Below are positions 10,934 through 37,144 of a stretch of 64,000 nt of DNA, one piece after another. Every line of letters begins with the position of its first letter. Position 1 is the first letter of the stretch. Position numbers and translations under genes: made by a program. The notes beneath the pieces were generated by a model. The model saw only the letters and a program-made list of their open reading frames with translations, had not been told where the DNA came from and did not search any database. The DNA comes from Botryllus schlosseri (taxonomy: Eukaryota): positions 8,494,001-8,558,000 of the forward strand of contig CM119383.1 in NCBI GenBank assembly GCA_051294905.1. The letters are read 5' to 3'.

Positions 10934-13900
10934 TCATTCCTTGTCCTTTTTGTCTTTCTTTTTGAGGAAGCTGAGCGAACGACGTTTCTGTTTCTTGCTT
11001 TCCTTCGGTTTTCCCTCTTTGTGCTTGCCTTTGGTTTCGGGCTTATGCTCGTCCGGGGTTTTCAGAGGACCCTCGTCTTCGGGCTGTGCTTTCGGGGCTG
11101 GGGTGAGAACCTCGCCGCTGCCTTTGCGCTGCGATTTTTTCTAGACGTAACGAAAGACACCAGAATTAGACATCGAAATGTCATGGGTATCAATGTAAAC
11201 CTACAATCATACATGATCTAATACATGTTAATATCCTCATATGCCGGTGATTGCGTAGACGCAATTATGGTTGGAGTTAACTGTGCGATTTTGGGTGCCC
11301 TAATAATATTTTCTGACCACACCATCGCAATTCATCAGGCCAGAGAAGGGTGGAGATCTCGCATCAATCTGACATCAGGTGAAACATGACTTTTCGCGCA
11401 CTATTAATCGCTGCAAGTGACTTGATCACTAGTGTAAGCATTAAGCAGCCTATAGATTTGTCAATAATGCTGATATACAGTCACTCACAAACACTAACAA
11501 AACTCCAAGCAAGTTGCTACAGAGATGAGAATTGAAGTGTGTGGTGAACACGCACAACAAAACATAAGTGCAACAATCGTGTCGTGATTGTGCTAGCCCG
11601 CAATCAGATATAAGCATGGATTCGGATTTTCAAGAAAGACATGAAATTTCTTTATTGTTTCAATCTTTATCTGACTATTGAACAAATATTAGTCATTACC
11701 GGTTTTAGCCTTGAATGTTCACACGATAAGAAAATATTCTGAACTTGAATTCACTCTAGGATTTGAAAATGTTAAATCCGCTCATAAACGACCCAAAACA
11801 CCGGACATGACAAAGGACAACAGTATTCAACATGTGGCCTAGTGATTGTGATGTAAAAGCTACCTTTGCTTTCTCCTTCGTAGGAGGAGACGGATCCGTC
11901 TGCAATTTGGTTGGTTTCGGCGTCTCTTCCTTGACCTCCACTGGTTTGTCAATGACGACTTGGGGAACAGGCTCGCGCTTCTCAGCCTCCGTCTCCACCG
12001 AAAGCGGCTCCGGAGCGATTTCAATTTGTACTTTATGTTCCACCTTTTCTGTTTCCTCCTGTTTGGAATCTGCGAATACACATATTGGCATGTGCGTAAG
12101 ACAGGGTTCTAACCAAGTCAATTTTACTTTTATAGCTTTGACCTGAATCAAGTCGAGTCATTTTCAATTCACCAAGCGATGTCGAGACTCGGGTCGACTC
12201 AAAGTCATATAATTTATTACTGTTCAGCACAGAGTTGTAACCAAGTCACAAGTCTCCGATTGACAAGTCAATCTCAATTTCCGAGTCCAAGTCAGTAAGT
12301 GGTATAAGGCCCTGCTAAGCTAAAAATCGCTATGGGGGAATTCATATCAGGCCTATTATATATGCACATGCACCTCTGTAAACAGTAAAACATCGGTACA
12401 AACACCATCGTACCCATGAGAGATCATCATCGTCTTTGGTTCATTAGCAATTTTTATCAGTTCAATACACCACAAAAATGCGATACAATGAAAAGACAGG
12501 GAGGTGTCGAAGCGACTTGGATTTGTCTATGGAATCAGACACCCACCTTGGCCTAGGCGATTTAAAGAGGAGGCATGCACACTGAATGAAAGTAAAGAAG
12601 ACAGTATAGAAAAAGAAGGCGACAAGAATAGGGCGGCATGTCATGGGAAGTGAGATCGATAGGTCAGTCGTGGTCCGGTAATCTTGAGGATGGACAGTAT
12701 TTATTTAATAGTAATTGCTTGAGTAATCTATGCAATCAGACACCCACCTTGGCCTCGGCGATGTAAAGAGGAGGCATGCACACTGAATGAATTGTAAAAG
12801 AAGATAGTATAGAAAAAAGCAAGTGACAAAAAATGGGGTGGCATGTCATGGAAGGCGAGATCGATAGGTCAGGTCGTGGTCCCGTAATCTTGAGGATGGA
12901 CTAGTATTTATTTAGTAGTAATAGACGACACGCACCATTAAAATTATCCCACTACACTCAGAGAGTTGACATGAAAATGAGCGCAACTGAAGTACTGCAG
13001 GGCTGGTATAGTTTACAGCGCAGGCGAATGAAACAACTGACGAAAAAGCTTTCTTACCCTCTTTCGGCTGGTCTGGCTCGTTGATTTCACCGACGCCGCT
13101 ATTTTCTTCCTTCAAGAAAACATCTGAAACGCAATCACAATACATATATTAGTATGCTACTTAAGGTCAGGATGAGGCAGATCAGTGCTGTTAGGTACGG
13201 AATATTTTGACAACTTAAGACGAGTGCCACAATTTTCTACTCGGACAGAATGGAAGCCAGCGCTTTCAAAAGCAGATCCAAACAGCCTCAAGTAGAAATG
13301 GAATGCCGAAAGCTATGAAAATGCGGCATCGAAAAGAAATTCGAGACAAGATTGCCAGATACATTTTTTTTCTCATAAGCACACGGTAAATTGCAACACT
13401 ATTCTACAAATAACAAGAACCCGAAGACTGCGCCGACCTTCGGCCTTGTCCGGTTCGGGTCGATCTCTCTGCGTGACTTCCAGCTTGTATTTCTCAATTT
13501 CCACATCGCTCACGCTCGCAAACGGATTTGGCGGACCGGTGACAATCGTCTGGCTGTGGTAGTCTCGCTGGATTATACCTTTGCTGGCGGTAAACACGCT
13601 GTCCTGTAAAGTAGAGGGATTGATTGACTGCAAGTCGAAACACGTGCTTATGCTGGCCACAACAGAACATTGCAGTTCTGGAGACGTCAATACAACAATT
13701 TCACATATAGAAAGTGTTTTAGCTTAAAAGATGATCAGTTAAACTATATAATGTAAACGTGGAATGGCAACGACCGATTTTGCAGCTTCGTTCCGCTTCG
13801 CTTAAGCTTTACTCAGACTTATTTTACGGCAGCTACTGTAGGATTTCTGGCAATCCAAAAGTTGTCTTCCAGAGCTCCGAATTTACTGAATCTGGCCTTG

Positions 13901-16900
13901 ATCGAAAGCTACTGTCGCACCGATTCCAAAAATGTAAATGAAAATATGATCAGGCACTGAACCGCTTAGAATTCGCCCTCCAAGGCTGAATTATCGGCAT
14001 TGTCCGAACAATCGAAGAGCCGCAATGGGTCATTGTTATGGTCATTGTTTTGAGGTCATCCGATTGTTCTGAACAATGCAGATTTTAGATATTGAGGGTG
14101 GTTTTTCATCTAAGTACGGTGCTTCACCATATTTTGATTGATATTTTCGAAATCAGTGCAACAGTAGCTTTCGATCAAGACCGGATTCAGTAAATTCTGA
14201 GCTTTGGAAGACAACTTTTGGATTGCCAGAAATTCTACAGTAGCTGCCGTAAAATAAGTCTGAGTAAAGCTTCAGCGAAGCGGAACGAAGCTGCAAAATC
14301 GGTCGTTGCCATTCCACGTTTACATTCTATAGTTAAGCGAAGGAGAAAATAACAAACGCCAATGACGCACGCAGTGAAATTCTTCGCAACTAGCCATCCC
14401 CGAATTTAACGCTAACCTGTAACTGTCCTCTCTTGTCGGCCGGGAGATAGCTGTCCAGCTTCTGCGACTGCGGCCCGGGACCTCGGTCTTCCTGCTTGCC
14501 CTGCCCTCGAATCTAAACGAATGCGCTCGGTGAGAGAGAAAAACTTCACAGAAAAAAAAAGAAAACAAAATTACCTTCTTCCTTCTCTCGGCGACCTCTC
14601 TCGGATCCGTGTTTTTCGGGACAAACTGATTCGGGTCGGAGATTCTGATCGGCGTGCTTTGTTTTGAGCCGGCGTCCTTGCTCCACTGTAAGCAAACGAA
14701 GTTTAAACCTACGGGTATCTACTTTCAAGAGGCTCTCGGCTGTGCAGAATTTCAATATACAATCAAGTAATATATTCATATTGAAATAAACCCGTATATT
14801 TTCACCTGGTAGTCATCAGGGTAATCAGGTCAGCAACTGCGAAGAACATTACACATCAACAATCATATCACCACATGTGATGTCACAGGTATAAAAATTT
14901 GAACGATAACAGTCAAATAGACAAACAGTACATTGACCTGACATCATCTGTTGAACTTGACCATTTGAATTTTTATGCATGGACATCATATGTGATGATA
15001 CGTTTATTGAAATACAATGTCCTTTTCAATTCAATAGTACATTGACCTGACGTCATCTGTTGAACTTGACCATTTGAATTTTTATGCATGGACATCATAT
15101 TTGATGATACGTTTACTGAAATACAATGTCCTTTTCAATTCTCTACTAGTTGCAGAAGATTACCCCTGATGATTGTCAGTCGAAAATATTCGGGTTTATT
15201 TCAATATTTAATTATATACCGTATCTACTTTCGGATCATATTGTATCATTACCCTCGCTTTGGACTTGGGGCTCGCGTCACCGTTCACGGAAGCCGGTCC
15301 AGACGAGCCTTCTTCGGACACTGCCGACACCCGGGTGTACTGATTGGGCGAGTTGATCCACCTGGACGGTGGCGGGTGGGACTGTAGCCTCGACCTCCCA
15401 TCTGCCAAAGCAAAGTTGAAATCAGGGATGCAACAATCAGAGCTGGTCAGATAGTATGATTACCGATTAGTAGCTGGATGATTCGAATCTGAGAATTGTA
15501 TTGACCTTAAATTCTAATTGACTATTCGAGTAGCGAAGCCTGTTATGATGTCGCGACAGACGACCAGTAACACTTTGACGAAATGATTGGAAGGTCTCGA
15601 TCAAGCTCAGAACAATATGATAGTAACCTGTGATGTAGTCAATATCAGAAATACTTGTCTCTCTAACTCTTTTCTTGGAGTCAGTGTATCAGAAAGCGTT
15701 GGTAGTATTTAACAAACTAATTACGCATCATCATCCTTTTTGGCAGCCAAGAGGTTTCACAAACCTTGAATTTCATCGAGAGGAATTGTGTGTCCGTGTG
15801 AATTGCCAGGAAGTTCCACGTCGCTTCTCGGCTTCGGTTTTCTGGTGTTCACAATCGGGTTTTTGTACTGATATCCAGTCCTATAGCCCTGAACATTTAC
15901 ATTATCTATCAGAATTCTATTACTAACATTCCGAGGCATAAATTGATAAGTGCTACTTTTCATTTATGACTAGTACAAAGTCATCAAATAATCCATAAAT
16001 AGTTCCCAGTATGCCGAATACCAGTATGTAATTGTCCACAGAGATGACTGCTTGAGTTAAGGTACTGCTGTATGCAGTATTATAAAATTAGAAGAACACA
16101 TCATCCGTTGTGGGTAGCTCCAGAAGCATATTGCTAGATTGCAATAAAATATTTCATGTTTGTGAGACTTTGGAGGTCACAACTGGCGATCAGAATCTAT
16201 TGTAAGCTGGTCCACGGCCTGGCTAAATGGGGAAGGTATAAGAAGGAAGGGCATCTGGTGTGACACTGCAGTCGTATTATGATATGGGGTCAATGAAATA
16301 CATATATACAAAACAGTTTGGGTGGAATTTGAATCTCAAGTACTAGATAACTTTCTGGTGAACAATCCTAGTGTGTATTGTCCATTCGGGATATCACACA
16401 CCAAATTATATTTATAACTATCGCAGACGGATTGGGCCTACCAGCAGGATCAGCGTTGATAGTCCATTACATAAGCCAAGGCTCCAATATACAACTCCTT
16501 ACAATGCGACCCGCCATTGACATGATTAACAACAGGACACATAAAACGTGGCTGGAAGCGCAATAAAAACTTCGACCACTCGACAGCCAGTGTTAAATCT
16601 AGTGTTGATCTCAACATCATTATATTTACACAGCAAACACTGAAGGGTTTCGGCAGGAAGCATGGCCGTTCAACCGGAATTAATTCAGTAACATGTAGCA
16701 CCCTCAGTCTCATACAAGCCAAAATGATCTTGTACTGTGATCTACGGTCATTGGCCATGTACAAATGACAAGCCGGCAGTGTAATAAAACAATATGATTT
16801 TCTCAATACCACGTATGAATCATGAAGACACACATAATCTAATGTCTCAGGTCAAGTCGGACTGGAGTGGGTATAAATAGCAACAAAAGATTATTGTTTT

Positions 16901-19900
16901 TACAAGAACACTTCCAAAAGTCAGACAAGAGGCAGCGACATAACATAGGATTCACATTTTCCAAGCATAGGATTCATAGAAAAAAAACAATAATAAGCTG
17001 GCTGCACGGTACATCGATACTGGTATAAAAACATAGGGAGAAGTGACCATCCCACCATTGTCAATGTCAAAATTGGATATAGCAATAGGTGTCGGGGAGG
17101 GGGGTTAAGCATTGTTCTGCGGATTGGATGCAAGAATGTAATAGGCAACATTGAATGGTTTACCAGTATCTGACAGTTTATATTTATTCAATTCATGAAA
17201 TAATGCATAATGATTCAAATCAACTTAAAATTTGATTTTTAACCAAAGAACAAAGCATTCTTGTGACGAGTGAAGTATTGGTTCATTTATTTCAGGATTC
17301 TCCAAATTTACAAAAACAGAAGTTTTGCGAATGTTGTATCTATATATGAAATGTGTATTTGGTGGACTAAATGGGCTATCGCGGTGTATGGGATTCAACA
17401 CAACTGTACACAAAGTCATGGCAAACATACCGATGCCAATGCCTCGTACTGAAAGCTGCATTTCAACTCAAAACTAAGTTATCTTCAAATCTAGTACCAT
17501 AACTTTCTGTGGTATTCGAATTAAAAATTGTTGCGTTTCGTGAAATGTTGCATCGCAACGTCCAACGTATAAAAACTGTCCGGAGCGCCAATAAAGAGGC
17601 CGGTTATGCGGACTTGATGGTACTTGAAACACGGTAGACTTTGCACTGAGAGCCTTGATACAACATTTGAGGCCCGGTGTAGATTTCAAGTAGCCGAAAA
17701 ACCCAACTAATTCTATCCATCAACCCAGTTCCCTCCGTATTTTAAGTGCCACTACTGTAATTCACGGCTAGAGACTACTTTGTCAAGGGCCTCGCGATCC
17801 TAGTTCAAACACCGTCACAAAGTCAGCATTTCGCCAACACCCGCAGACTTTACATACAACCCTACACCGAATAACCGGGATAATTATTAACAAGCAAATC
17901 ATCGATTATACCTCACGGTTTTGTATCATTTTTAACCAATGTAGCTAAGTTTACAGTGGTCAGACAGATAGCTTTAAAAATCAAATGAGAGATGCGTTAC
18001 CATTGAGATATTAATCCATTATCTCATTCTTGGAACTGGTCATATCAAATCGAGATTGGTACAGCCGTCGAACACATTGAACGTGACAGACTGTAACATG
18101 GTTCAATGTCAAACAAAAGACAACGTTTCGCTTTTCAAATCTACTGGGTGCGTAATATATCACAGAATTTTGAAAAAAAAATGATAAGATCGGGCGTGTG
18201 TTATGCTACTGCGTACTGCCTACAATGAAAACCACTTCAATCACTCAGTGTGGTATAGAATTGACATTATCATATTACAGTATATGCCGGGGATAATCTT
18301 TTCCATTGTCTGTTGGTAACTCAAAATATTAGAAGTACTTCAAACTTTAACGGTAAGAACAACTGGCATTCAGCTTCTTTGAGTGCATTTAGAAGCGTGC
18401 TTAGGTGTAAATACTACTGTGGAGCCACAGATATAAAGTTACATTGAGAAATCCCATAACTAGCTCTATTCACAGGGAATTCTCCACGCTTGGATTAGAA
18501 TGGCTTACCATATTGTCTAGCATTCTCATGTATGCTTCAAACATCAATTCACCATATCCCCACTGAATCGGGTCGTCTTTATTCACCATTGTCTCCGCCC
18601 CAGTTCTGACAGTTTCAGCTACCTTGTTCCTCGTCGCTTTATCGAGAACGATTAGTTTCTCCGGTTTAACACAGGACATGACGCGTATCTTCGATAAAAA
18701 TTGTGATATTACAACCGTTGTAAATGTGCTCGAAATAGAATCAAGTGAACTCCACCTGAGTTTTGCAAGCTTCGATGGCGGTGCAAAGTAAATGATAGGC
18801 TTCCTCAACGGTTTCTCCGCAAGCCAGCATGCCGTGGTTTCTCAGTAACATAACCTGGAATACAAAAAATCTGTAGTATTTCCCAGTTATTAGTCGCCAT
18901 TTGACCGTTGATGTAAGCTAACAAATTAGCGTCAACATAATAACAGACTAAAAACGCCATTCCACACGTACATACACATAAAGCACTGAGATTATATGGA
19001 GAGGTCATAATCTTATGAATACAGTTTCCTAAAACATCATCATACACTTTGCAAGTTTACAAAATGTCTCAAATACACAATGAGCAAAATAGCACTTTCA
19101 ATATTAAACACTCGTCACTTCAAATAACAAGATATTCTCAAACCGTAAGTGCCATCCAGCTGTACTTACAACCACAAACACTTATAGACCAGTAATCGGT
19201 GACATGCTATAGCAATCTAAACCAGAAACCATCCATAAATCATCGATCCAGTCATAACAGATTGGAGAGGCATAAAATTATCTAGTCTACACTTCAATGA
19301 ACCCACGCCCGTTTGCATGTATAGTACACATTTACGTTGGCCACCGATCTGTCAGAGTGCATACAAATTATTTTGCCATCTAAGATGATGTATTGTTCCG
19401 TAATGACCAATTTTCCATATCAATTTAGATCGATGAGGTATCTGATATTGCTAAATCACATTTTCTGAAGCGAAATGGTCTGGAAAATATTCGATTTCAA
19501 AATTCACAAACTAGGGAGCTTTGGATAGACATCTGTATATGCAATGCAGAAAATAACTCACATACATGATACATTCCTTACCTGAACACCGCATTAACCT
19601 TGAATTCGACGTGAATTAAGCTACACAAACACGGAATCTTACTTTATTATTTGGTCCGAGATGCTTCAAGAGCGACTTTTTCTCTTTTTGGTCCACCACG
19701 ATCCCATTGTAAGGATGGATCGAAACTTCGCCGAGTATGCAGGCCTCTTGCGATATTGGTAGGATTCCGCCTTCCATCATGGACACCTAAAAGACAACTT
19801 CTATGACAAAAGGACTATACGAAGTGACTAAAAGACAACTTCTATGACAAAAGGACTATACGAAGTGAATACAGGGTAAAACATAACTCATATCTCATAC

Positions 19901-22900
19901 ACAATTTCCATGTATATATTGTAACTACCTTCTGAACAGCAAAGATTTTTTGAAGATAGGTATGGAATTTGTAAGCAGTGTTGTCATGAATTTGCTGTAA
20001 GAATTATGACTTCGACTTGCACAGATATGCACTAAAATAGAACAAAAGGTGCAAAAATTACATGGCTGTGTCACGTTGAGTGTATACCGCAAATACTGGT
20101 TAATCATTCCCTTGTGAAATACGATTTGGATTATTATTTGAACAATTTATGACCGGATTTCGTATCACCCGTAAATTTCGATAATTAGCATCAATTGTGA
20201 GCAAGGTGATATAGAAAAGAAAAGGGTCCCTTAAAAGATAATGGCTTACGCACCGCTATTACTTCAGGAACATGCACATGAATCACACAATTCAAGTCCG
20301 GTCGGCCGGAATGAATGGCAGAATGAATCGTGAAGCCGGCTTTGTTGATTGGAAAATTCGTCGTGCCCTGGTCAATGACGTCGCCTTGCATATTTATCTG
20401 TCAAAAGAAGAATTTGTTCAAGAAAAACACTTCAACAGACACTGGTGCAATATTACCAACACAGGTTACAATACCAACCATTCTACTAACAAGCTACTAG
20501 CTACATATTTTGAAAAATTCCATGTTTGAAACCATGTTGTCCGACTAGGCTGCAAAGCATTGCAGATTACACGACCGTCGCATACGCAGTCAGAACCGTC
20601 ATTATAAATATTTCATTACTGTCAATGCGGCGGATAGCATGGCCAAACTCGGGTGTGTAAAACGATAGACTACATCAAGATATCGCGTCTCTAATCAATG
20701 GTCGGAGATGATCGATAAAAGTTTCCAGGATCAATGTTGCAGTTTGGGATTGCCCTGATAGTATGTTTGATTTCAACTTGCAACTATCAGTATTTTACAA
20801 TAAACAGCTGATAGCAGACGTAAATATGAAGTCAAACCCTGTCAAACAGTATTTTACAGAGCATTACCTATCCAAAATATGGTATTACAATATCTCTATG
20901 TTCTCCCAGAGCATAGATGGATGCCATTTACAAGGAATTGATTAGGAGCAGGTCTGCGAGAATAGCTCTGCATTTGAAAATAAACAGACCTCTCGATAAG
21001 GGACAAGAGCCGTGCTTGTTAAGTGTTTGATCAAGGTATCGGCAAAGTGTGGAGATGAGCGGCTTGTATTAACCTACCATGCCTTTCACTCCGCGCCACA
21101 CCCTTCTAGGTAAATTTCATCGCCATTCATAGAGCCAACTGTAAAAGTACACTTTACCAGTGGAAAAATATGCGAAATAGTGGAGCTTTAATTAAAATTG
21201 AGCATGAAAGTATATTATTTGGCAATATCTGGTCCGATGCAATAATGAATTTAAACAAATATTAACCAAGCTAACATGCAATAGATGCAAAAATCAATTT
21301 TTTTCAAGGTATACAGTATCAATTCCGCCAAGTGTGATTTTGCAGAATAAAAAGATATTATGACAGCAAAATAGTGCAGTACTAGTCATCTGTTGACCAA
21401 CTCTTATCTGGCATCCCACGAACCTTTAGCAGCTTTGAGGCCGACACTTCGTGATACAGAAGACCGAATGGGTTGATAAGAAAGTGTTCTTGCTCTTTCT
21501 CGACACGATACTGCAACAAAAGTCAATATTCAATTATTGCCTCTATAGTCAACGCAATAAATTTGCGGATAGAATTTCAACGTAAAGTCTACTTTTCTCG
21601 AATCACAGAAAATATACGGCACATCACGACACCGATAATACCCTGAAAGTTACAGCAAGATAGTACAAGATTCGAACTTCATGAATTATTCAAACACGGC
21701 AAGGTCTCTGCCGTCTTAGAAAAGCAAGGGTCTTTGAAGTAAGAACCTGAGCAATTCTGTTTGAGTATGACTCTGATGTGTGACTAACTGTATTATAATT
21801 TTTTATTAGATTCAAATCAACTTCATATTACAGACACATTCCAGGAACAAGCAATAAGTATCTCAAAATTACACGCAATCATTTTATCAAAAACCTCCCA
21901 GCAGGCAATCTCTATTAGGCTATACACTACAAATGGAAACCGTGACGCCTTGAAATCTTTGATCTATAGGATTCAACTTTTTTCCCCAGCAGAACGTTTT
22001 AATAAGGCAGATACCGGTATCTATGGTGGGAACAACATTGTCCAGTATACGTCATTCAAAAGTTTAGAGGCGAAAGTTGGTATGGCGATAAAATCATTTA
22101 ATACAGGATATTATTGACGACAATTGGAACATGGTGCTTGAAACGCATGATATTCTTGTGAGGACTGAGACTTAATTCTATTTGCAAGGATAAATCAGAC
22201 ATAATCTATGCTCAGTAAGAATAGAGTTTACTGTGACACGGATCAGACTTTCCAAAATTAGAGGGAAAGACGCACACAAGATTATTGGGCTCCACTTATC
22301 TCGCTTCATTTGAACTTCAGCAATCCCATTCAAATATTCAGATGCTCACAATTTGTTTGTCAAGAAAGATTTTTATTCCAATACCTCACTCCACCTCTCA
22401 GACTTATAGCCTGTACTTCATTCCGATTTGGATGTATGTTGGTATTGATTATGCAAAATTTACCCTGATTCAGCCGTGGTCATAGCAAGGAAGGAAAATT
22501 CTGTACCGAAAAATACCTGAAGCTGGTGATGGGCCATACCGACGGTGGTTAATCAATCTGTTATACCAATAATGGTAATGAATTAGAAATTGCTATTAGA
22601 ACTTAGCAGAAATATTGACATGCAAATTGTGGTATTAACCATCTTTGAATTACAAGACCAGCATTTGATTAATCGAAACTAACTTCTTCAAAAGACCAAT
22701 CCAAATCCTGGAGCTAGGCATATCACTTACACTAATATGATTGTAAATCTGCATCGACCATCCGTTTAAATCAACCAGCCTATAAAGAGCTGCAACTTTG
22801 CATCTTGCCAGCTTTTCCCCTTTAGTATATCGTGAACAATCCGAGCCTGTGATATCGTTAATGGGCGAAACGCATCCGATTCCTAAACGCAAATCATTCA

Positions 22901-25900
22901 TTATGCAAGCAAAATAGCGAATTAAACGAAAGATCGCCGGTGTTTAGCATATATAGCATTAAGGCCATGCTCCATGCAATGCAACATACTCCCAGCTTCC
23001 GCTTGAGATTGAGAAACAACATTATTCACAAGTTACATTTACAATGACCAGACCAAAGCAAATAGGCCTATGCAGTTTATCAAAGTATATCATAAACCAG
23101 TATTTGACTTATTTTATCCCCCATGACCATTTACCACTGCTGATTAGCAGATTGAAGCAGTAACCGCAGTGATTACATGGCCTTATCTAGTTCTTGTGTA
23201 TACCATGTTCAAAAGAGGCAGCAGATCAAGTCATACTGAGGACCTACCTACCCAGAAGACATTAATAGCTGGGTACAATCTTGACAATGACAGTAACAGA
23301 TATGCATTTTCACAAACAATCTTCCATGACTCACAGAAATATGAAAAAAGGAACACAAGTTCTTATGGGTAGCAATGTAATTATATTTGTGAGCATAACA
23401 TATCAAATTTCTAAAAGAAATGACAAACTTGTTGTAGAATGACACATCTAGTCGGTGGTGTTGACTTACAAGTTGGGATGTTAGAAACAGAATTTATTCA
23501 GTCTATTTTTGTGTCACCCAGACAATCATGCCATAATGACCATAAAATAACAGGTACCATGGACATGACTCACTTACAAGAGCGAGCAAACAATCTTATT
23601 TTGATTCTAAATCGTTTCAACACAGGGGTTAAATGGATTCCTCTGAAACATGTGTTGTAAAACAAAAAGTCATGAGCATGCAATATCTGTATCTGTCTCA
23701 ATATATAACGGTGGGACGGGAGTCATTCATAGGCATCACAGGCGCCACAGCCTGCTAAACATCCTACATATCTTACAGCATACAGCAGTACACCTACTGT
23801 CCTTTGCACCATACCTAGAGAGTATGATCCCATTATTTAATTAAATATTTACAAACAGCTACCATTTTCAGCAGCATTTAATAGTGTTGCAAGCGTCAAA
23901 TTTAACCGAGCAAAGAGCATGGAAAATTAACTGGATAAGATTTAGATATAAGCTACTCAACAACAGTTTTGCATTTCCATTATTATTATTACCATATTTA
24001 CCATGCAAGTTTTTGTAGAAGAGATCCTACAGCTAATTACCATTACAGAGTCACATGAATCATTTCCGAATATCTGCCAAATTATCAGGCAAGATTAAGA
24101 TTGGGTAAGTCCACATAATTGGGGCAGGATCAAATTACTAGTTGATAATCACACCCAATTAGTGCTGTGATAATGAATGTGACAAGGCATCATTATTACA
24201 ACATGGCATGGCACCAGTGACAATACAAAGCAATCACCTGTCTTCATGCTGAAGCTGCTGGAACCTGTTTTGGTTGAGGAAACAGCAGAGCATAAGGAGT
24301 TGTGGAGTAAATCAATAAGAAATCGTAAATTACCAAAACCACAGTAGGCCTACCGGTCACAGCTTTTTAAACAAAAGGCCAATGACATTTGGCTCATAAA
24401 TTGAACTATTAAAAGACTGTTATGACATATCTTTACTAAACTACATAGGTCTAATCAGGATGGTGAATGCTATTCAAATTATTCGGCACCCTTTTACTGT
24501 TCACTTTTTAGACTCGCTCTAGTAGTTACTAGTAATGCTACTTATCAATTCCTGAATGTTATTGCAAAGCAATTGTTTCATAGATTGGCTTGTATTGAGC
24601 AATTGGAAAGCAATACTTTTGCTCGTACACCAGCAACCATCATATACCTAACCTTGATAATTTTACCTTGTACAATGTAGATAATTCAACCATTAGCTGC
24701 AGTACCGATAATTCACACAAACACAAGCCGCAGATAAATCATATTGAAATAGCCATAGTTTTTCAAAAAGACAGACAATGAGGAGTGAATGCATAAAAAA
24801 GGGCACATTTCATCAACTACAGACAGTCAAACACGATGTGTCGGAAATATCAAGAAAATCCAAACCCGTAATGTAACAACATAACGCTAACAAGATTGTA
24901 AAGCAAAAATTAAGTGCGGCATCACAAATGTACAGAATTTTCTAGAGAGTACCAACCGGTATTTCACGAATGCAATGAAAACTTACCCATTCTGTGTGGC
25001 GACAGCATGTTCGCTATCTCCTCGGCTATGACATGACCGCCTCCATCGCCAGATCGCAACAAATCAGTAACGACGGTCTCAAGCTCTTCTTTGAACATCT
25101 AATCATAAAGTAATAAGTCAGCAAAGGACAATCCAATTGAGTAATTAATTGACTGACACTTGAAAGGTCAATTGCATTTGACATGGCAGACCAATATAAT
25201 ACCCAGCGGAGAAGCGTAGCTGTAAATTACATTTACAAGCTATAATGCAGCACTCGCTCCGTTATTGCCGCCATGTATCTCATACTTTTGACGTAGACGG
25301 TAGGCCTATGTGAATACAACCTGTAAACGCACATTTGTATATTATCAAGACAGAAAGTAAGCAGATAATATCTAAGGTTAAAAATGCGGCATTACCGGAC
25401 TTCTTAGAACTGATGACACTCTTTTTTTCTGTCCCAGGTCGGTAACGTCCTGGTCAATAACCATCGGTCGGCGTACTGGTTTCACTCCAAATTCCGCTTC
25501 TACATCAGCCCCTGAGCTGCCGTTAGGAGACACTGGCGGGGACTGAAAATAAGTTGATATCAATGTATTTTAACATCAAAATCGGGGATAATAGAATGAC
25601 CTGGTCGAACAATATATCAAACCCAACACAGCCTACAATATTCTATTAAAACTTTTGCACAGTGGTGCCTGAATAGTTTTGTCGGATAGATCACAACCAT
25701 GGTAAGCTAACAGAGCCTATATTGAGACATGGATGCACAACAGTGGTTCCCAACCTTTTGCGACTCATCGCCCCCTTATCAAGCTCCACATATATTTATC
25801 GCCCCCCCCCCCATATTTTTGGATTGGAAGAGATGGAAAATTGCTGATAAATTGACTGAAAAAATAAAAAGGTCAACTTTTTGCGACAATCCCGGTATCT

Positions 25901-27324
25901 GAGGATACGTTGTGGCAAGTTGACCTTTCTTTTTTGACAACTTTTTCGTGTGTATTTTGTGCCAGTATCCGTTTGCTAAGTAGTTGAATATATCTGACTG
26001 AACATTTCAAGATTTTCTCCCCCTATCGCCACCTTCCTACGTTTTCGACCCCTTTGTTATTCCCCCCGACTCGTTTATTAAAATCGCCCGTGTTGGGAGC
26101 CACTGGTTTATAACATCAGAGGTGAGCTTTGACTACTTCTACTTGATATTAGTATGTACATCCAAGAAAAATTATCACAACATGTATATTGCACGCAGTT
26201 CATATTTGATTTATAAGGCTATCAAAGAACAAAACCGGTGTCGACTAGAAGATTTGACGTAATCTCGAATCCATGAAAACATTTTAATTTCAAATTAGAA
26301 CACTTGAACAATATCATGTTACATTCTTTCAAGATATAACTCTTAGGTCACTACAAAAACAAACAGTGAAAAAGAACCATTGATTGGCATAATAACAATT
26401 TGAATAATGCAACGCACTCCTAGTAATGTTATTTCAATCAAAAACTGACCGCCATGAATTCTAATGTCAAAAGTTCAACAATTACACACAAACTTTCAGA
26501 CTAAACGTATTTAACATACCGTACCCAATAGTATTAAAACTAATGCTGTGGTAGACTATTTATGGCATCAAAGTCACCAAGCAGCAGCACATTGTGATTC
26601 AAAAGTAACTTGTTCAATGATAATAAGCTATTTGGGTACAGAACTTCAGAATATAGCAAAATAATAACTTCATATTGCTAATTTATTTGGTAAAAGCTTT
26701 TTGATCGACCATCATCAGTAGCGAACGTCAGAAATAGGGTGAATCAAATTTGAAAAGTGGGAACTGTTTTGCCTGTATGATATAATAATAACAAAAAGCA
26801 AACAACTAGTAGACAGGTCAGATCCATCATATGGCATAGAAAGATTATCTCTTTTATCTGGCGAACCGAGCGCTAAACCAAAAAAATCAAAAGTTGCGGT
26901 TGTACTGATTCTGAAAATATATATTATAATTTGGTCACTGCCACTGGAATTCCCCAAAACCAACTTCAACGCTGGAAATCGAAAAGTTCCTTACTGTCTA
27001 GAAGTATATTATCTGTCAATGAAAGCAATAGCACATTGTATCAAAGCGCTGGATAGGCCTATCTGATTGCCAACATAGGAAAATGGTGTGAAAATCACCC
27101 TCCATGAAACTCCAAATGCATACATTCAACTGACTAACAACCACATATTTCAATATTGATCCCTTTTTCAATTCTTCGGAAGTAATTTGATGATAGTATA
27201 AGACTTGGACTGAATTGAAATAAATAATGCAATAAATAGGTAAATGTACCACATTGATACCACATTCGTTTAAACGTACCTGGTGGCGTCCATTTTCTGC
27301 CATGTTAGGAGTTTTCATCGCCAT
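10934..27324 (-). CDS. ADD: Adducin (hts/ADD family), 18 coding exons, 753 aa
   Basis: Exons: 27324-27280, 25542-25396, 25098-24987, 24264-24238, 22882-22731, 21510-21424, 20397-20254, 19786-19643, 18854-18756, 18688-18509, 15888-15765, 15401-15253, 14685-14575, 14512-14417, 13603-13438, 13123-13058, 12069-11864, 11140-10934. All GT-AG, phases compatible, total 2262 nt. Class II aldolase-like head motifs ([43 protein letters not shown]), neck (GYRTGY, DPNQFVP, GPQSQ) and a basic MARCKS-like tail ([14 protein letters not shown]). The first exon and the 27-nt exon are the least certain. Confidence 0.95.
12536..12900. repeat. Two tandem copies of a ~200 bp dispersed repeat
   Basis: CAGACACCCACCTTGGCCT(A/C)GGCGAT...GAGATCGATAGGTCAG...GTGGTCC near 12536 and 12737; related pieces near 9081, 57649-57770 and inverted near 58131. 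Confidence 0.8.
13745..14331. mobile_element. Fold-back (long inverted repeat) non-autonomous element with 7-bp TSD, P/Galileo-like
   Basis: Arms of roughly 200+ bp are near-perfect reverse complements (TATATAATGTAAACGTGGAATGGC... / ...GCCATTCCACGTTTACATTCTATA); flanks GTTAAAC (13738-13744) and GTTAAGC (14332-14338). Lies in an adducin intron. Confidence 0.85.
14927..15141. repeat. Tandem duplication, 109-bp period, 2 copies (adducin intron)
   Basis: AGTACATTGACCTGAC...TTTTCAATTC starts at 14927 and again at 15036. Confidence 0.9.
19787..19868. repeat. Perfect 41-bp tandem duplication including an adducin splice acceptor
   Basis: CTAAAAGACAACTTCTATGACAAAAGGACTATACGAAGTGA twice, directly abutting the exon starting at 19786 (minus). 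Confidence 0.92.
25741..26105. mobile_element. hAT-type MITE (CAGTGGTTCCCAAC family)
   Basis: TIRs CAGTGGTTCCCAAC / GTTGGGAGCCACTG; a related right end at about 57597-57648. No matching TSD seen. Confidence 0.7.
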
Positions 27325-28122
27325 GAACTTAGATTCCCTTATTTACACTTTTATAAGATCCAATACTTGCAATACAATCCACTGATATCAAATGTTTAAA
27401 AAGCACATTCACTAACGACACAGCTCATGCATAATACGCTGAAAAGAAATTCATGTCATGATAATATATCAATAAATACTTGGTATTTACTATAGGAACC
27501 AAGTTTCTTTCCTCAAATCAAACCTATAACTCGCGATTCATCAATTTTATCAAGTTTCAAAGAGACGTCGAAATAAACAAGACACCAAAAGCGTCGCGTA
27601 TGATTATAATCAAATATCACATTACAAATTCAGGAAAGCATGATCAGTATCATTCTAACGCACACCACACCTGGCTATCTATCTGTCACATTTCTGCGGT
27701 GCATTCTGATCAGACTGCATCTTGATTGACGTTCACGCTACTGTCACCATTACACCTACATGCTACATCGCCGCCATCGTCATACAATGATAACCGAATA
27801 CTACTCAATATGATAAAAGGGCACCGATAAATGTAGTTCGCGTAGCAGGATCACTATAGCGTACGAGTCTATAACAAATTAACCATAAAACGACCAAACA
27901 AAATGCAATACGCGAGAAGCGAAGCTGGCCTATTTGCAAAGCTACTACGACCGCATATTACCAAACTGCAGCTGAAACAAAAATATCAAAATGGTCATGG
28001 CTCGGTGGAGTTTAGATAAACACGATTTTTGTGTACTACTGACACTTGTCGGCGAGGCAAGATTCAAGTATCCCACCGATAGGTGGCGACATCTCAAGAT
28101 ACCAACTACCAAACTATCTAAC

Positions 28123-28738
28123 CATAGTGTCCTATATGGTGTCGACACAGGCAAATCTCACGCCTCAGTGAAATTGTATCACGTCACAATTTCCATTTGG
28201 CTACAGACAATTTGACGGTCATTTTTGACCGGCTTGCCGAGCATTAAATTAGTTAAAACGGGTATCAATCGAAAGCTGACTCTCCACTGATCACGAAAAT
28301 ATAAATTTTATCCCGCTCGTGGCCCTGGAACTCCCACAATCAGCCTCGAATTTTTCATTGTTATGGAGATTGGCATTGGGACGCAACAATGCTGTCTGGC
28401 GAAACGAGAGAGTCGCTCAGGACGTAACAATGCTGTCTGGCGAAACGAGAGAGAAAAAGAGCCAGACACCATTGTTACGTCCCAATACCAATCTCCATAA
28501 CAATGAAAAATTCGAGGCTGATTGTGGAAGTTCCAGGGACACGAGCGGAATAAAATTTATATTTTCGTGATCAGTGGAGAGTCAGCTTTCGATTGATACC
28601 CGTTTTAACTAATTTAATGCTCGGCAAGCCGGTCAAAAGTGACTGTCAAATTGCCTGTAGCCAAATGGAAATTGTGACGTGATACAATTTCACTGAGGCG
28701 TGAGATTTGCCTGTGTCGACACCATATAGGACACTATG
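28123..28738. mobile_element. Fold-back element 1 (CATAG...CTATG), 616 bp, 7-bp TSD ATCTAAC
   Basis: Arms of ~280 bp are near-perfect reverse complements; the centre holds a direct duplication of GACG(C/T)AACAATGCTGTCTGGCGAAACGAGAGAG; ATCTAAC at 28116-28122 and 28739-28745. Confidence 0.92.
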
Positions 28739-28745
28739 ATCTAAC

Positions 28746-29343
28746 TATAGATAACTAACCTACGGATAGATGGGCAGCACGAGAGTCACGGTCGAGTGAT
28801 GCGACAACGGCAGATTTGTTGTCGCTTCATAGCATGAAACGGGAGCGTAATTGCTAATCCCATAGATGACGACCCGAGCGCTCAAATTAAATAAAGTTGA
28901 TCTTATTTGAAAGCTACAGTCGCGCTGATTCTGATAATATACATTAAATTTTCATCAAGGCAATGGAACCACCCCGAAATAGCCTTCAAAATATGAAAAT
29001 CGGCATTGTTCTAAACAATCGCAATCACGCATGGACCGTTGTTATGGCCATTGTGCTGCGCCGTTGCAATTGTTTTAGAACAATGCCGATTTTCATATTT
29101 TGAAGGCTATTTCGGGGTGGTTCCATTGCCTTGATGAAAATTTAATGTATATTATCAGAATCAGCGCCACTGTAGCTTTCAAATAAGATCAACTTTATTT
29201 AATTTGAGCGCTCGGGTCGTCATCTATGGGATTAGCAATTACGCTCCCGTTTCATGCTATGAAGCGACAACAAATCTGCCGTTGTCGCATCACTCGACCG
29301 TGACTCTCGTGCTGCCCATCTATTCGTAGGTTAGTTATCTATA
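28746..29343. mobile_element. Fold-back element 2 (TATAG...CTATA), 598 bp, 7-bp TSD ATCTAAC
   Basis: Arms of ~270 bp are near-perfect reverse complements; ATCTAAC at 28739-28745 (shared with element 1) and 29344-29350. Confidence 0.92.
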
Positions 29344-29570
29344 ATCTAACTAACTAACTAACAACTAACCTACGGATAGATACGCAACACCCGTCGTCAC
29401 GCTCTCTTGCCCGGAGGAAATTACTGGTCAGCAATCTCTACATACCCATGTGAATCCGAGAAATCGCGACCAGAATCCGAAAAATTCGAATTGGATAGGT
29501 TTTCCTGAAGAATGATAATTGTACGTACACTGTACAAGTACAGTACAGCTGATCTGATATGTAGTTAGAG

Positions 29571-30140
29571 CAGTGGTGGGCAAACTACGGCCCGCGGGCC
29601 GCATGCGGCCCGCAACACCGTTCTGTGCGGCCCGCGAGAGTCTAAAGAAACTTTTTTTAAAATATTGATAAAATGCGTACTAAAAATCGTAATAATGAAG
29701 GGACTTGATTAAAGTATTTCTTAGTTTATTTCACCATGATAATTCTAGGACAGTGGTTCTTGAACTGGAGAGCGTGAACGCATCAGAAGTGGGCCGCGAA
29801 GCTGAGCTCACTTGAAAAAATTTTTCGCGCTTCGCGCAATTTACCAACAATTTCATAATTGTTGCTCTGTATTTAGTCTGAATTTCACATTTTAAAATCT
29901 CTCATCTATAGTCGTCACCTTCCATGCCATCAAACTATCCGTTAGGTTTGCTAGCAACCTAGTTGCGTTTTGTGATATGACGTTAAGGGGGCGCGAAATC
30001 TTTCACCATTATAAGTTGGGGGGCGTGTCTTAAAAAGTTCGATAACCACTGTTCCAAGGTATATACTTTCATATATTATTTTTATGTTAAATTTCTGGCG
30101 CGACAGCCCGATCTTAAGGCCCACACAGTTTGGAAGGTTT
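29571..30140. mobile_element. Decayed hAT-type MITE with a nested CAGTGGTTCT-family MITE (29751-30051)
   Basis: Left end CAGTGGTGGGCAAACTACGGCCCGCGGGCC; nested element with TIRs CAGTGGTTCTTGAAC / GTTCGATAACCACTG. The outer right end is degraded and its boundary approximate. Confidence 0.65.
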
Positions 30141-31152
30141 CAACTGCTAAAGATCACAGAAATCCTAAACGATATTGACATAATTCGGATCACGAGTGGG
30201 ATTTCAGATCGGCCACTCCAGTTTCAATTATTTCAGTGATGCGCTTACCAAAACCGATTCGCTAGTGTCTTAAGTAGATTCGTTCTCTGTATGCGTAGAA
30301 TTGGGCATTTATATTTCATCTACACATAGTAAAAGCGTGTTTGAAGCTAACATAGTTATGATTCTGTGAGCATTGTGTATCCTTTGTTCTATCATACATT
30401 AGCTCCGGCTCCAGCTCCGGAGTCGCATTATTACCACTGCTCCGGCTCCGACTATGAAAACTATTGAAGGTGTCTGTCTATATCAGGGGTGCTGGGCAAC
30501 CCGCGACCTGCGGACCATATGTGGCCCGCGAGAAGGTTTCAAGTAGCCCGCGAGCAAATTTCCCATTCTGTTATATTATCGAAATTGAATTGTTCAGATT
30601 GTGAACTTGCTAGGCCAACCAAAAATATATTTAGTATTGCCGCGACACTTGGGATGATGATGACTAAAATATCAGTACCGACGCATTGGCAGATCCAGGG
30701 TCAAGCAGTCACATTTTTAGTAAGGGTGGAGGCCAAAAAGCTGAGTAAAAACATCCTGGATTTTCGCCTAATCTGCGAGTTCCAAGATCTCCCGATTTAG
30801 AAGTAGATGATCCGCACGCCAAAACATTGGATGTTCGTGCGAAGTTAGTAGATCTACAAATCCAGGATGTGGGACGCTATTGCGTCAAAATGACGCAAAA
30901 TGTAGTGATCCGTGAAAGGTTGCTATGTCAACCCACCGACTTCGTAGTAAATATTATGCTTTGGCAATGCTGATTGGAAATGTCGTCGATTTTGGTCATG
31001 TGCTATGAATGCCATCGTTTCCTAGGTAGACTTATGAAATTGATTTGAAGCCACTTTGCAGCTTTAATGCATATTACTCTGTAGTTTATTCACAGGTATA
31101 AGTTCTAAACACGGCATTGCAAACTGGTACTGTTGTTATTGCTGTCTGTAGT

Positions 31153-32194
31153 ATGGATATTTTGGACATCGTAGATGGCAGTTCGGACGAGTGACGACTA
31201 GAATACAATTGTCATGCCCAGGCATTACTTGGCAAACATATCGGACTCATTTGTAAAATACCCAGAAAATGAATTTGTTGACCGCTACAGATTTTACAAG
31301 GGAGCTACGGTAATTCTATTGGACTTGATTAAAGACAGCCCATGGTTGGATGTACGGTGCCAAGCTTTGCACCACATGATGCAATTACTCTGTGCTCTCC
31401 GATTTTTTGCTACGGTCATTTTCAACAGACAGATGCTGACTTGATTGGTGGCAGCCGGACAACTGCACGCCGAATCATCCACTGCATTTCTTGGGCATTA
31501 TCAGAGAATAGAGAAAATTTATCCTACGATTGGATGATTTGTTACAAAAAAAGAGTGATTTCTTTGACATAGGTGGAGTTCCAAATGTCATCGGTTGCAT
31601 TGATGGTACCCATATCCCAATAAAGTCCCCAGGTGACTCTGTACCAGAAAAGCTTATCGTTGCAGGAAAGGATATTTTTCTTCGAACTGTCAAATGGACT
31701 GCAATGCCAAGAGAATACCGGTAGTGACTAATGCTGTTGTGAGATGGCCAGGGAGTACTCATGACTCAAGAACTTTTTCAAATTCCAGATTAAAATACAA
31801 GTTCGGCCAGAAAAAATACAATGGGATTTTGCTGGGAGACAGAGGCTCTATGCTCTAAAAATGTACCTGGTTACTCCATTAACAAATCCACAGGCTGCAC
31901 AAGAAAAAAAAATACAGCTATATGCACTCAAAGACACGCGTGCTGATCGAGCAATGATTTGGCGTTCTTAAACTGCGTTTCCAGATGTTGCTAAATCCTA
32001 TGCGAATGCAAATCGAAAACACCATCCTGGCAATCATTGCAACAATATGTTTGCACAATTTTGCAACAAAAACCAATGAGCCAGTTCCTGATATTGCAGT
32101 TACTCCCGAGGAAGCTACGGATATAACATCTGAAGTTCGATACACTGACGCAATAGCCTATCTTGAAAATAAGATGAACACATATTTCTACTAA
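31153..32194 (+). pseudogene. Harbinger (HARBI1-like) DDE transposase, frameshifted with stop codons
   Basis: Motifs in shifting frames: QLLCALRFFAT, PNVIGCIDGTHIPIKSP, RWPGSTHDSRTF, GILLGDRG, KTRVLIEQ*FGVLKLRF, IIATICLHNF. Confidence 0.9.
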
Positions 32195-36268: not shown

Positions 36269-37144
36269 CAGGGGCGGGCAACATACGGCCCGCGGGCCGG
36301 ATCCGGCCCGCGAAGGGATTTTGTCGGGCCCGCGGACAGTTTTCCGTCTTACATGATAATGTGGCCCGCAGCCCCTGTCTGCCGAGATTCCCCACTACTT
36401 GCTTACTATGTCAAATTTTGTGACTGTATGTTATTATATACGTGAATTCGCAGCGTGCGAGAGTAGAGCTTACGCATAAGTTCGTTGAAGCGAGAAGACT
36501 TGCATTATCGGCATTTACGATGTACTCAGCCCTAATGTCGTTTGTGGTAATCATGGTGTTTGTCGATTAAACTGATCATTTACACCGGGCTGATATATCA
36601 TATTTTTGAATCCGTAACCGCCGACTTGCAGCACGGTACACTTCTAGGCTTTCGTAAGACACTGCTTATGTCAGGGGTCGCCAACTCAAAACGGGCCGCG
36701 GGCCACTTTTCAAATTTCGTGGAGGACGGCCCCGCATGAATTCAATATCGAGATTAATTAAGCCACACAGTTGAACAACGGCGCTATCTGGTCACCTACT
36801 CAATCCTAATAAATTAATATCTTGGTAAATTTGGGGTACCGGGCTTATCGAACGCGTTGAAATCTTAATTAGGAATTGCACCGTGTGTTCATTGATCAGC
36901 TGGAAGCAGACATGACGACGCCTGTATGACAATGCTATTCTCAAATCCACATTGTCTTCGTCGTTATCGGCGAGAAATGGTTTTGAAGTGACATTGCTGT
37001 CGTTGAAATACATTCAACAAATACGATTTATTCCTTGTATACGAGGATAAATGGGCGAATAATGCATCGATTCAGCAATCCGGCCCGCCAAGAAATTAAT
37101 TTTCCTAAATCCGGCCCGCCGACTGGAGAAGTTGCCCGCCCCTG
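36269..37144. mobile_element. Nested hAT MITE (CAGGGGCGGGCAAC)
   Basis: TIRs CAGGGGCGGGCAAC / GTTGCCCGCCCCTG; perfect TSD ATGTACAC; a further hAT left-end fragment inside at 36672. Confidence 0.92.

What the first reader, a model, noticed from the sequence alone, without database searches (positions are those of the whole stretch)
28116..29350. Two different giant hairpin transposons stacked on one shared 7-bp target duplication
Seen: ATCTAAC-[616 bp fold-back, CATAG..CTATG]-ATCTAAC-[598 bp fold-back, TATAG..CTATA]-ATCTAAC. The two elements have unrelated arm sequences but use the same target. The empty site is a (CTAA)n-like tract, and a diverged copy of element 2's subterminal sequence (AACTAACCTACGGATAGAT) follows at about 29363. 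The stack lies about 0.8 kb upstream of the first adducin coding exon. Known: CA..TG ends, 7-bp TSDs and fold-back structure characterise the Galileo and 1360/Hoppel branch of the P superfamily. Inference: a sequence-targeted transposition system that repeatedly reuses one site, with the second insertion duplicating the TSD left by the first; two adjacent cruciform-capable hairpins beside a promoter could also be a rearrangement hot spot.
Basis: partly seen in the sequence, partly recalled or inferred. Interest (0 to 1): 0.75.

Follow-up and report, generated by a model that had tools for sequence, protein, structure and literature searches.

The report
Two hairpin transposons sharing one target
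Two small gene-less hairpin-shaped jumping genes landed one after the other in exactly the same 7-base target upstream of a sea squirt's adducin gene; fruit-fly P elements are already known to do this, so it is a tidy but ordinary case.

Summary
E1 (28123-28738, 616 bp, 278-nt arms, 97% complementary) and E2 (28746-29343, 598 bp, 270-nt arms, 99%) are complete fold-back elements. ATCTAAC lies before, between and after them.

The arms are not unrelated. The inner halves of E1, E2 and a third fold-back in an adducin intron (E3, 13745-14331, flanked by GTTAAAC/GTTAAGC) are homologous. Only the outer ~130 nt differ.

Contigs from public runs show both families are highly repeated in this sea-squirt genome. 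They also show "tips-only" E2 remnants elsewhere (18+16 and 21+19 nt of the two ends). That pattern fits scars of a P-type long staggered cut.

The 7-bp duplications on all three elements and a GT...AC-like target also fit the Galileo/1360 branch of the P superfamily. No transposase partner could be retrieved.

Double insertion into one target duplication, often near promoters, is documented for Drosophila P elements (PMC5932611). A strictly sequence-targeted system is therefore not needed and not supported. E3 uses a different target, and flanks of other E1 copies are heterogeneous.

The right flank holds a (CTAA)6 tract and an E2-related end fragment, possibly a third visit to this site.

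The earlier scan noted 7-bp-TSD fold-backs and P-type scars elsewhere in this genome. Alleles and assembly correctness could not be tested.

The parts
28116..28122 (.). Target-site duplication, copy 1 (ATCTAAC), left of E1
   Evidence: Unique flank reaches at least about 28108 in run contigs (variant at 28078 at single-copy depth).
28123..28738 (.). E1: 616-bp non-coding fold-back element with CATAG...CTATG ends. Arms are 278 nt with 9 mismatches. The centre carries a 34-nt direct duplication (28379-28412 and 28420-28453).
   Evidence: Summed contig word depth is about 10^4 times that of the unique flank in three runs. The longest internal ORF (83 aa) is absent by exact look-up and has no homologue; other short ORFs were looked up only for exact identity.
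28739..28745 (.). Target-site duplication, copy 2 (ATCTAAC), the only bases between E1 and E2
   Evidence: (D4)
28746..29343 (.). E2: 598-bp non-coding fold-back element with TATAG...CTATA ends. Arms are 270 nt with 2 mismatches; the loop is 58 nt.
   Evidence: Summed contig depth is about 10^3 times unique. Tips-only and internally deleted derivatives occur elsewhere in the genome (tables 5 and 5c).
29344..29350 (.). Target-site duplication, copy 3 (ATCTAAC), right of E2; first unit of the (CTAA)6 tract at 29346-29369
29351..29437 (+). E2b: left-end fragment of an E2-related subfamily. It lacks the terminal TATAGAT, which is replaced by TAACTAACTAAC. In other genomic copies this stretch runs on into E2-like sequence from about 28844-28850.
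   Evidence: (D1, I3). joints 29412/29421/29437 -> 28844-28848 are seen in X1, X5, X6 and X9.
13745..14331 (.). E3: 587-bp fold-back relative in an adducin intron, with TATAT...CTATA ends. Arms are about 218 nt, 91% identical. It is flanked by GTTAAAC / GTTAAGC (7-bp TSD, 6 of 7 matching).
10937..27324 (-). Adducin gene, on the minus strand. The stack lies 5' of it. The ATG exon at 27324 is a candidate only.
   Evidence: PF00596 hits on exons 22653-22943, 21385-21522, 20194-20400 and 18744-18917, in collinear profile order. [17 protein letters not shown] tail at 10937-11140.

Best explanation
E1 and E2 are two diverged members of one group of about 600-bp, gene-less, hairpin-shaped miniature transposons (fold-back MITEs). 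A transposase encoded elsewhere in this sea-squirt genome moves them, most likely a P-type (THAP9/Galileo-like) enzyme that makes 7-bp staggered target cuts.

One element inserted at ATCTAAC and duplicated it. The other later inserted into exactly one of the two copies and duplicated it again. That gives TSD-E1-TSD-E2-TSD.

The site was reused because it is a favoured landing place: the 5' region of a gene, a half match to the GT...AC target motif, and a resident element end that can hold transposase nearby. A strict sequence address is not required.

What is shown: the anatomy, the 7-bp duplications, the relatedness of the elements, their high copy number, and tips-only remnants elsewhere.

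What is inferred: the P-type enzyme, the order of insertion (E1 probably first, since its arms differ by 9/278 against 2/270 for E2), and the reason for reuse.
For: Anatomy and exact triple ATCTAAC.

E3 carries its own, different 7-bp TSD, so the 7-mer is target and not element.

Homology of the inner arms: E2-E3 79/111 identical, score 47 against shuffles 17.4+/-2.1; E1-E3 32/38, score 36 against 17.1+/-2.2; positions are collinear.

Both families are highly repeated. Contig alignments of other E1 copies break at the E1 edge with heterogeneous flanks: 33 contigs in X6, agreement 0.39.

E2 tips-only forms occur elsewhere: 28763->29328 (18 nt + AG + 16 nt) and 28766->29325 (21 + 19 nt). These match what a roughly 17-nt staggered P-type cut leaves behind (PMC7776569).

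Galileo and 1360 make 7-bp TSDs (PMC3698922). The Galileo TSD consensus is GTANTAC (PMC4168063). E3's GTTAAAC fits GT...AC, and ATCTAAC fits the AC half.

P-element dimers separated by exactly one TSD arise by double insertion, are common in wild flies and lie nearer to transcription starts (PMC5932611).
Against: No autonomous partner or THAP/P transposase with these ends could be retrieved.

The superfamily call therefore rests on TSD length, scar geometry from a truncated table of contigs, and two target sequences.

E2 ends in TA...TA rather than the CA...TG of classical P elements.

ATCTAAC is only a half match to GT...AC.

No read or contig spanning the E1/E2 joint was seen, because contigs break in the repeats. 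Independent confirmation of the assembly and of alleles is lacking.

Other follow-up notes in this scan assigned larger 7-bp-TSD fold-backs of this genome to Mutator.
Confidence: 0.7

Rival explanations
1. Same double insertion, but the elements belong to the Mutator/Foldback (MULE-F) superfamily rather than to P.
For: The fold-back shape is classic for Drosophila FB, which is placed with MULEs. Two earlier follow-up notes in this genome called 2.9-3.2-kb fold-backs with 7-bp TSDs Mutator-like (not tested here).
Against: TSD is 7 bp on 3 of 3 elements, whereas MULE/FB elements typically make 8-11 bp, commonly 9 (background knowledge). The arms have no internal tandem subrepeats. Tips-only remnants of about 16-21 nt per end are the signature of the long P-type stagger.
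Confidence: 0.12
2. A truly sequence-addressed system: these elements home to ATCTAAC/(CTAA)n tracts, so stacks are the rule.
For: The same 7-mer was used twice. A (CTAA)6 tract adjoins the site. A third family fragment lies at the same place.
Against: E3 sits in GTTAAAC with no CTAA tract nearby. The flanks of 33 other E1 copies give a weak consensus, agreement 0.39, that is not ATCTA. Two further ATCTAAC sites in the window (33065, 53732) are empty. There is only one stack among three elements in 64 kb.
Confidence: 0.08
3. Assembly artefact: two hairpin repeats from different loci or haplotypes were joined at a shared short sequence.
For: One search listed no contig bridging the E1/E2 joint. 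Both families are very abundant, and the sample is heterozygous in the left flank.
Against: Each element is complete to the base and boxed by a perfect 7-mer. A mis-join would not be expected to produce a TSD-exact structure. The whole stack is 1.2 kb, well inside one modern long read (inference).
Confidence: 0.04
4. One composite event: E1-ATCTAAC-E2 moved here as a unit, or arose by ectopic exchange between two elements that happened to have like flanks.
For: P-type elements can use ends of neighbouring copies (hybrid-element insertion; background knowledge).
Against: The inner 7-mer would have to equal the new target by chance (about 1 in 16000). No other copy of the E1-TSD-E2 joint was reported among the joints, although that table is truncated.
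Confidence: 0.03

Closest known systems
Drosophila P-element tandem dimers made by double insertion (McGurk & Barbash 2018, PMC5932611; head-to-head doubles in Tower et al. 1993, as cited there)
   Same: Two complete elements are separated by exactly one copy of the target duplication that also flanks them. The location is near the 5' end of a gene. The explanation is repeated use of a strong insertion site.
   Different: The TSD here is 7 bp, not 8. The two partners are different, non-autonomous fold-back families rather than two copies of one element. The host is a tunicate. The structure is seen in a reference assembly, not followed in a population.
Galileo (and 1360/Hoppel), the long-TIR branch of the P superfamily in Drosophila (PMC4168063, PMC3698922, PMC3688188)
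   Same: Fold-back-like long inverted repeats, 7-bp TSD, palindromic GT...AC target (GTANTAC), many gene-less two-TIR copies, and ends more conserved than the rest.
   Different: The elements here are much smaller (about 600 bp), almost pure hairpins with a 58-60-nt loop and no tandem subrepeats. The ends are YATAG. No transposase was found here. Here it is the inner halves of the arms that are conserved between families.
P-MITEs of Anopheles gambiae (Quesneville et al. 2006, PMC1562414)
   Same: High-copy non-autonomous derivatives presumed to be moved by P-type transposases. They are recognised by their ends and TSD.
   Different: The Anopheles P-MITEs have 27-31-bp TIRs, 8-bp TSDs and demonstrated sequence identity with autonomous P ends. 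Here the partner is not identified.
Drosophila Foldback (FB) / MULE-F elements and Tm1 of root-knot nematodes (PMC3169594)
   Same: Hairpin architecture.
   Different: Those elements have 9-bp TSDs and tandem subrepeats in their arms (background knowledge). Neither feature is present here.

Membership tests
P superfamily (Galileo/1360-like) | 7-8-bp target-site duplication | tested here: met
   ATCTAAC x3 around E1 and E2; GTTAAAC/GTTAAGC around E3
P superfamily (Galileo/1360-like) | Palindromic target motif with GT...AC at the TSD edges (GTANTAC in Galileo) | tested here: inconclusive
   E3's GTTAAAC fits. ATCTAAC fits only the AC half. Alignments of many other E1 copies run 1-2 nt (AC) into the flank. 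Only two independent targets are available.
P superfamily (Galileo/1360-like) | Excision leaves about 17 nt of each end (long staggered donor cut) | tested here: met
   joints in E2-family contigs elsewhere: 18+2+16 nt, 21+19 nt, and 22-23 nt plus filler. The table is truncated and comes from contigs, so this is supportive, not a full distribution.
P superfamily (Galileo/1360-like) | Autonomous partner with the same ends encoding a THAP + P-type transposase | not testable with these tools
The species genome is not in the protein or contig collections. There is no THAP signature in the window.
MITE (miniature inverted-repeat element) | Small, no coding capacity, inverted ends, TSD, high copy number | tested here: met
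   587-616 bp; only short ORFs: the longest E1 ORF found no homologue and none of six element ORFs is in the protein collection by exact look-up; thousands of contig pieces per run
Double-insertion dimer | Two complete elements separated by exactly one TSD identical to the outer TSDs | tested here: met
Foldback / MULE-F | 9-bp (8-11-bp) TSD and tandem subrepeats within the long arms | tested here: not met
   The TSD is 7 bp. TRF and the repeat finder show no subrepeats in the arms.
Site-specific (sequence-addressed) transposon | Same target sequence at most copies | tested here: not met
   E3's target differs. Flanks of other E1 copies are heterogeneous. The other ATCTAAC sites in the window are empty.

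The most novel reading that the evidence does not exclude
The site was visited three times by members of one P-type fold-back group (E2b, then E1 and E2). The cause would be that transposase held on a resident element's end steers incoming elements to the adjoining target duplication. That would be an end-directed 'homing' which builds hairpin stacks genome-wide in a chordate and could seed satellite arrays or fragile sites near promoters.
Probability: 0.15. Interest if true: 0.55.

Novelty: new member of a known kind. Interest (0 to 1): 0.3.

Why it matters
It extends a behaviour known from fruit-fly P elements, repeated insertion into one target duplication near gene starts, to hairpin MITEs of a chordate relative. 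It also adds a clean example that the 7-bp, long-inverted-repeat branch of the P superfamily is abundant and recently active outside insects. Two 270-bp-arm hairpins sit 5' of adducin, so this is a convenient locus for asking whether such structures affect promoter activity, small-RNA production or breakage. Nothing here calls for a new mechanism.

Tried and rejected
Collecting genomic copies:
- Exact look-up of ten ORFs from the elements, junctions and adducin exons found none in the collection.
- A word search with the 83-aa E1 ORF found nothing.
- Exact look-up of the neighbouring 872-aa gene found nothing. Its homologue search gave a single 42%-identical hit from another organism. The genome is therefore not in those collections.
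- Metagenome scans with the E1 tip found nothing. The E2 19-mer gave one hit, L001, which has no inverted repeat or fold-back; by my reading of its sequence it is a prokaryotic-looking coding contig (type I restriction-modification-like), a chance match.
- Two viral-collection scans found nothing.

Other searches:
- No further YATA...TATR elements with 7-bp TSDs occur in the window.
- There is no E2b right end, and no ATCTAAC-flanked partner downstream.
- No THAP-like ORF is present, and there is no Rfam family match.
- The Kimbacher 2009 and Marzo 2008 papers are not held.

Readings rejected:
- The 28066-28093 'third copy' of the E2 subterminal motif (64%) is chance. It lies in single-copy sequence.
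- The idea that ATCTAAC is part of an older element's end does not hold: the bases to its left do not read YATAG.

Step left out: I did not build a joined adducin protein model. Exons were searched apart by reference.

Full report
**Anatomy**

ATCTAAC lies at 28116-28122. E1 follows at 28123-28738: 616 bp, CATAGTG...CACTATG, arms of 278 nt that are 97% complementary, 60 nt between them. ATCTAAC recurs at 28739-28745. E2 follows at 28746-29343: 598 bp, TATAGAT...ATCTATA, arms of 270 nt that are 99% complementary, 58 nt between them. ATCTAAC recurs again at 29344-29350.

The inverted repeats cannot be extended into the 7-mers, so the 7-mers are flank. As single-stranded DNA the stretch folds into two independent, almost perfect hairpins. 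The arms have no tandem subrepeats. The only tandem array is (CTAA)6.2 at 29346-29369. There is no Rfam family match and no meaningful ORF: the longest internal ORF finds no homologue, and the other short ORFs are absent by exact look-up.

**The elements are related**

A self-search found a third fold-back, E3, at 13745-14331 (587 bp, arms about 91% identical). It is flanked by GTTAAAC and GTTAAGC.

Alignment of all six arms shows that the outer ~130 nt differ between E1, E2 and E3. The inner halves and the neck of the hairpin are homologous, with blocks such as ATCGAAAGCT..CTGAT..ATATAAAT, GGAAC, AGCCTTCAA and GCATTGTTCT.AACAAT. The pairwise scores are:
- E2-E3: 79/111 identical, score 47 against 17.4+/-2.1 for shuffles.
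- E1-E3: 32/38 identical, score 36 against 17.1+/-2.2.
- E1-E2 directly: weak, score 25.

In all three pairs the matches lie at collinear positions. All three elements start with YATA and are 587-616 bp long. E1 and E2 both carry GGCA at nt 28-31 from the tip; this is a lead for a shared binding site, and it is not significant on its own.

A scan of the whole window for YATA...TATR inverted ends with a 7-bp duplication returns exactly these three elements. 'Two different transposons with unrelated arms' should therefore read 'two diverged members of one fold-back MITE group'. E3's different flanking 7-mer shows that the 7 bp are a target duplication and not part of the element.

**Genome-wide evidence**

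The organism is a sea squirt according to earlier notes of this scan. Its genome is not in the protein or contig collections available to me. The only genome-wide evidence is therefore one laying of Logan contigs from four runs.

- The left flank is single-copy up to at least about 28108, at depths of about 12-20 in X1 and about 120 in X5.
- From E1 onward everything to 30500 is repeated. Summed word depth is about 10^4 times the flank over E1 and about 10^3 times over E2. This is a rough abundance indicator, not a copy number.
- In X6, 33 contigs from other E1 copies stop aligning 1-2 nt outside the E1 edge. Their flanks agree only 0.39 with one another. The E1 boundary is thus confirmed as a mobile-element edge, and the target is not one fixed sequence.

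**Superfamily**

Four lines point to the 7-bp, long-inverted-repeat branch of the P superfamily.

1. All three elements have 7-bp duplications. Galileo and 1360 make 7 bp and P makes 8 bp (PMC3698922).
2. The Galileo TSD consensus is the palindrome GTANTAC (PMC4168063). E3's GTTAAAC fits GT...AC, ATCTAAC fits the AC half, and other E1 copies often share the AC next to the element.
3. One search shows E2-family contigs elsewhere in the genome in which only the tips remain: 28763 joined to 29328 (18 nt, AG, 16 nt), 28766 to 29325 (21 + 19 nt), and 22-23-nt tips with filler. P transposase is unusual in cutting 17 nt inside each end (PMC7776569). End-joining after excision would then leave about 17 nt of each tip.
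4. Earlier notes of this scan report a P-type two-gene element with TATAGAG ends and 7-bp TSDs, and hundreds of 17+17 scars. I could not check these, so I count them as leads only.

Against this assignment, no transposase partner was retrieved, E2 ends in TA rather than CA, and other notes called larger 7-bp-TSD fold-backs of this genome Mutator-like. Foldback/MULE-F membership fails on TSD length and on the absence of arm subrepeats.

**Why one target was used twice**

The structure TSD-element-TSD-element-TSD is what a second insertion into one copy of the first element's duplication produces. This is documented for Drosophila P elements. Most tandem P dimers in wild strains are separated by exactly 8 nt matching the P target motif. 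They arise by double insertion, are found in over half of the strains surveyed, and lie closer to transcription starts than single insertions. Head-to-head doubles were frequent in a genetic screen (PMC5932611). P elements also prefer promoters and hop locally (PMC7776569).

The stack lies 5' of adducin, which runs on the minus strand. Aldolase_II/adducin exons are at 22.9-18.7 kb, and a lysine-rich tail exon is at 10937-11140. The stack is 0.8 kb from a candidate ATG exon at 27324 that I could not verify, and 2.5 kb from the first recognisable adducin exon.

The ordinary explanation of a favoured site hit twice is therefore sufficient. A strict sequence address is contradicted by three observations: E3's target, the heterogeneous flanks of other E1 copies, and two empty ATCTAAC sites in the window.

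**The right flank**

After the third ATCTAAC comes TAACTAACTAAC and then AACTAACCTACGGATAGAT, identical to E2 nt 8-26. Similarity to E2 is then 25/28 over 28 nt and decays beyond. In all four runs, contigs from other loci join 29412-29437 to E2-like sequence at 28844-28850. So 29351-29437 is the left end of an E2-related subfamily (E2b). It is truncated internally here and lacks the terminal TATAGAT. No right end of E2b exists in the window.

This may be the remnant of a third, older insertion at the same place. That would fit the idea that a resident end attracts newcomers. The missing tip makes it unprovable here, and I leave the origin of the (CTAA)n tract unexplained.

**Order and age**

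E1's arms differ at 9 of 278 positions and E2's at 2 of 270. At 28312 the left arm of E1 carries a private base, while nearly all family contigs and its own right arm carry T. At least some of the mismatches therefore arose after insertion. E1 is probably the older insertion, and E2 would have entered E1's right-hand duplication. This is inference; arm-to-arm conversion could blur it.

**Not tested**

I could not test whether the stack is polymorphic, whether both haplotypes of the source animal carry it, or whether long reads span it. Contigs break in the repeats. I also could not test whether the hairpins are transcribed or fragile. The misassembly rival is unlikely, because each element is complete to the base and exactly boxed by the 7-mer.

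**Verdict**

Its reading as P-type double use of one target is reasonable. The phenomenon is a known behaviour of P-type elements, seen here in a new host and with two different MITE families. It is a new member of a known kind and of modest interest.

Noticed in passing
window 13745-14331: A third fold-back relative (E3, 587 bp, arms about 91% identical) sits in an adducin intron with its own 7-bp duplication, GTTAAAC/GTTAAGC. That duplication fits the GT...AC target palindrome of Galileo.
   Followed up: yes
window 28746-28768 and 29321-29343 (as seen in run contigs): Contigs from other loci, in run X5, keep only the two tips of the E2 family (18+16, 21+19, or 22-23 nt with filler such as a 31-nt TATCCCGTATA repeat). 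They look like excision scars. There are also internally deleted copies (28888->29263).
   Followed up: partly
window 28888-28990 and 29193-29310: A run labelled as a different organism (X9, organism B) has contigs 100% identical to E2 over 103 and 118 nt, and an E1 piece with 5 differences in 175 nt. It has no coverage of the unique flank. Possible causes are a sibling species, carry-over of organism A DNA, or recent transfer.
   Followed up: no
window 27000-28064: Both haplotype contigs of run X5 (same species label, other study) differ from the window by about 7-8% plus indels in the unique flank. The source sample X1 is itself heterozygous here. This indicates very high polymorphism or cryptic lineages.
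   Followed up: no
window 29573-29690; also near 30490-30560, 36269-36298 and 54550: A GC-rich palindromic repeat (GGGCAAACTACGGCCCGCGGGCC...GCGGCCCGC) is as abundant as E1 in the runs (about 10^4 times flank depth). It recurs in the window and is probably another MITE family.
   Followed up: no
window 31214-32194: Frame-shifted remnants of a PIF/Harbinger-type transposase (weak DDE_Tnp_4 hit, E 9.5e-4, below the curated cut-off) lie about 2 kb right of the stack.
   Followed up: partly
window 28379-28453: The centre of E1 carries a 34-nt direct duplication 41 nt apart (97% identical). Either copy can therefore pair with the right arm (alternative loops of 19 or 60 nt).
   Followed up: partly
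L001 155-173: The only metagenome hit to the E2 19-mer has no inverted repeat or fold-back; by my reading of its sequence (no family search was run) it looks like a prokaryotic type I restriction-modification gene contig. It is a chance match and not a transposon copy.
   Followed up: yes
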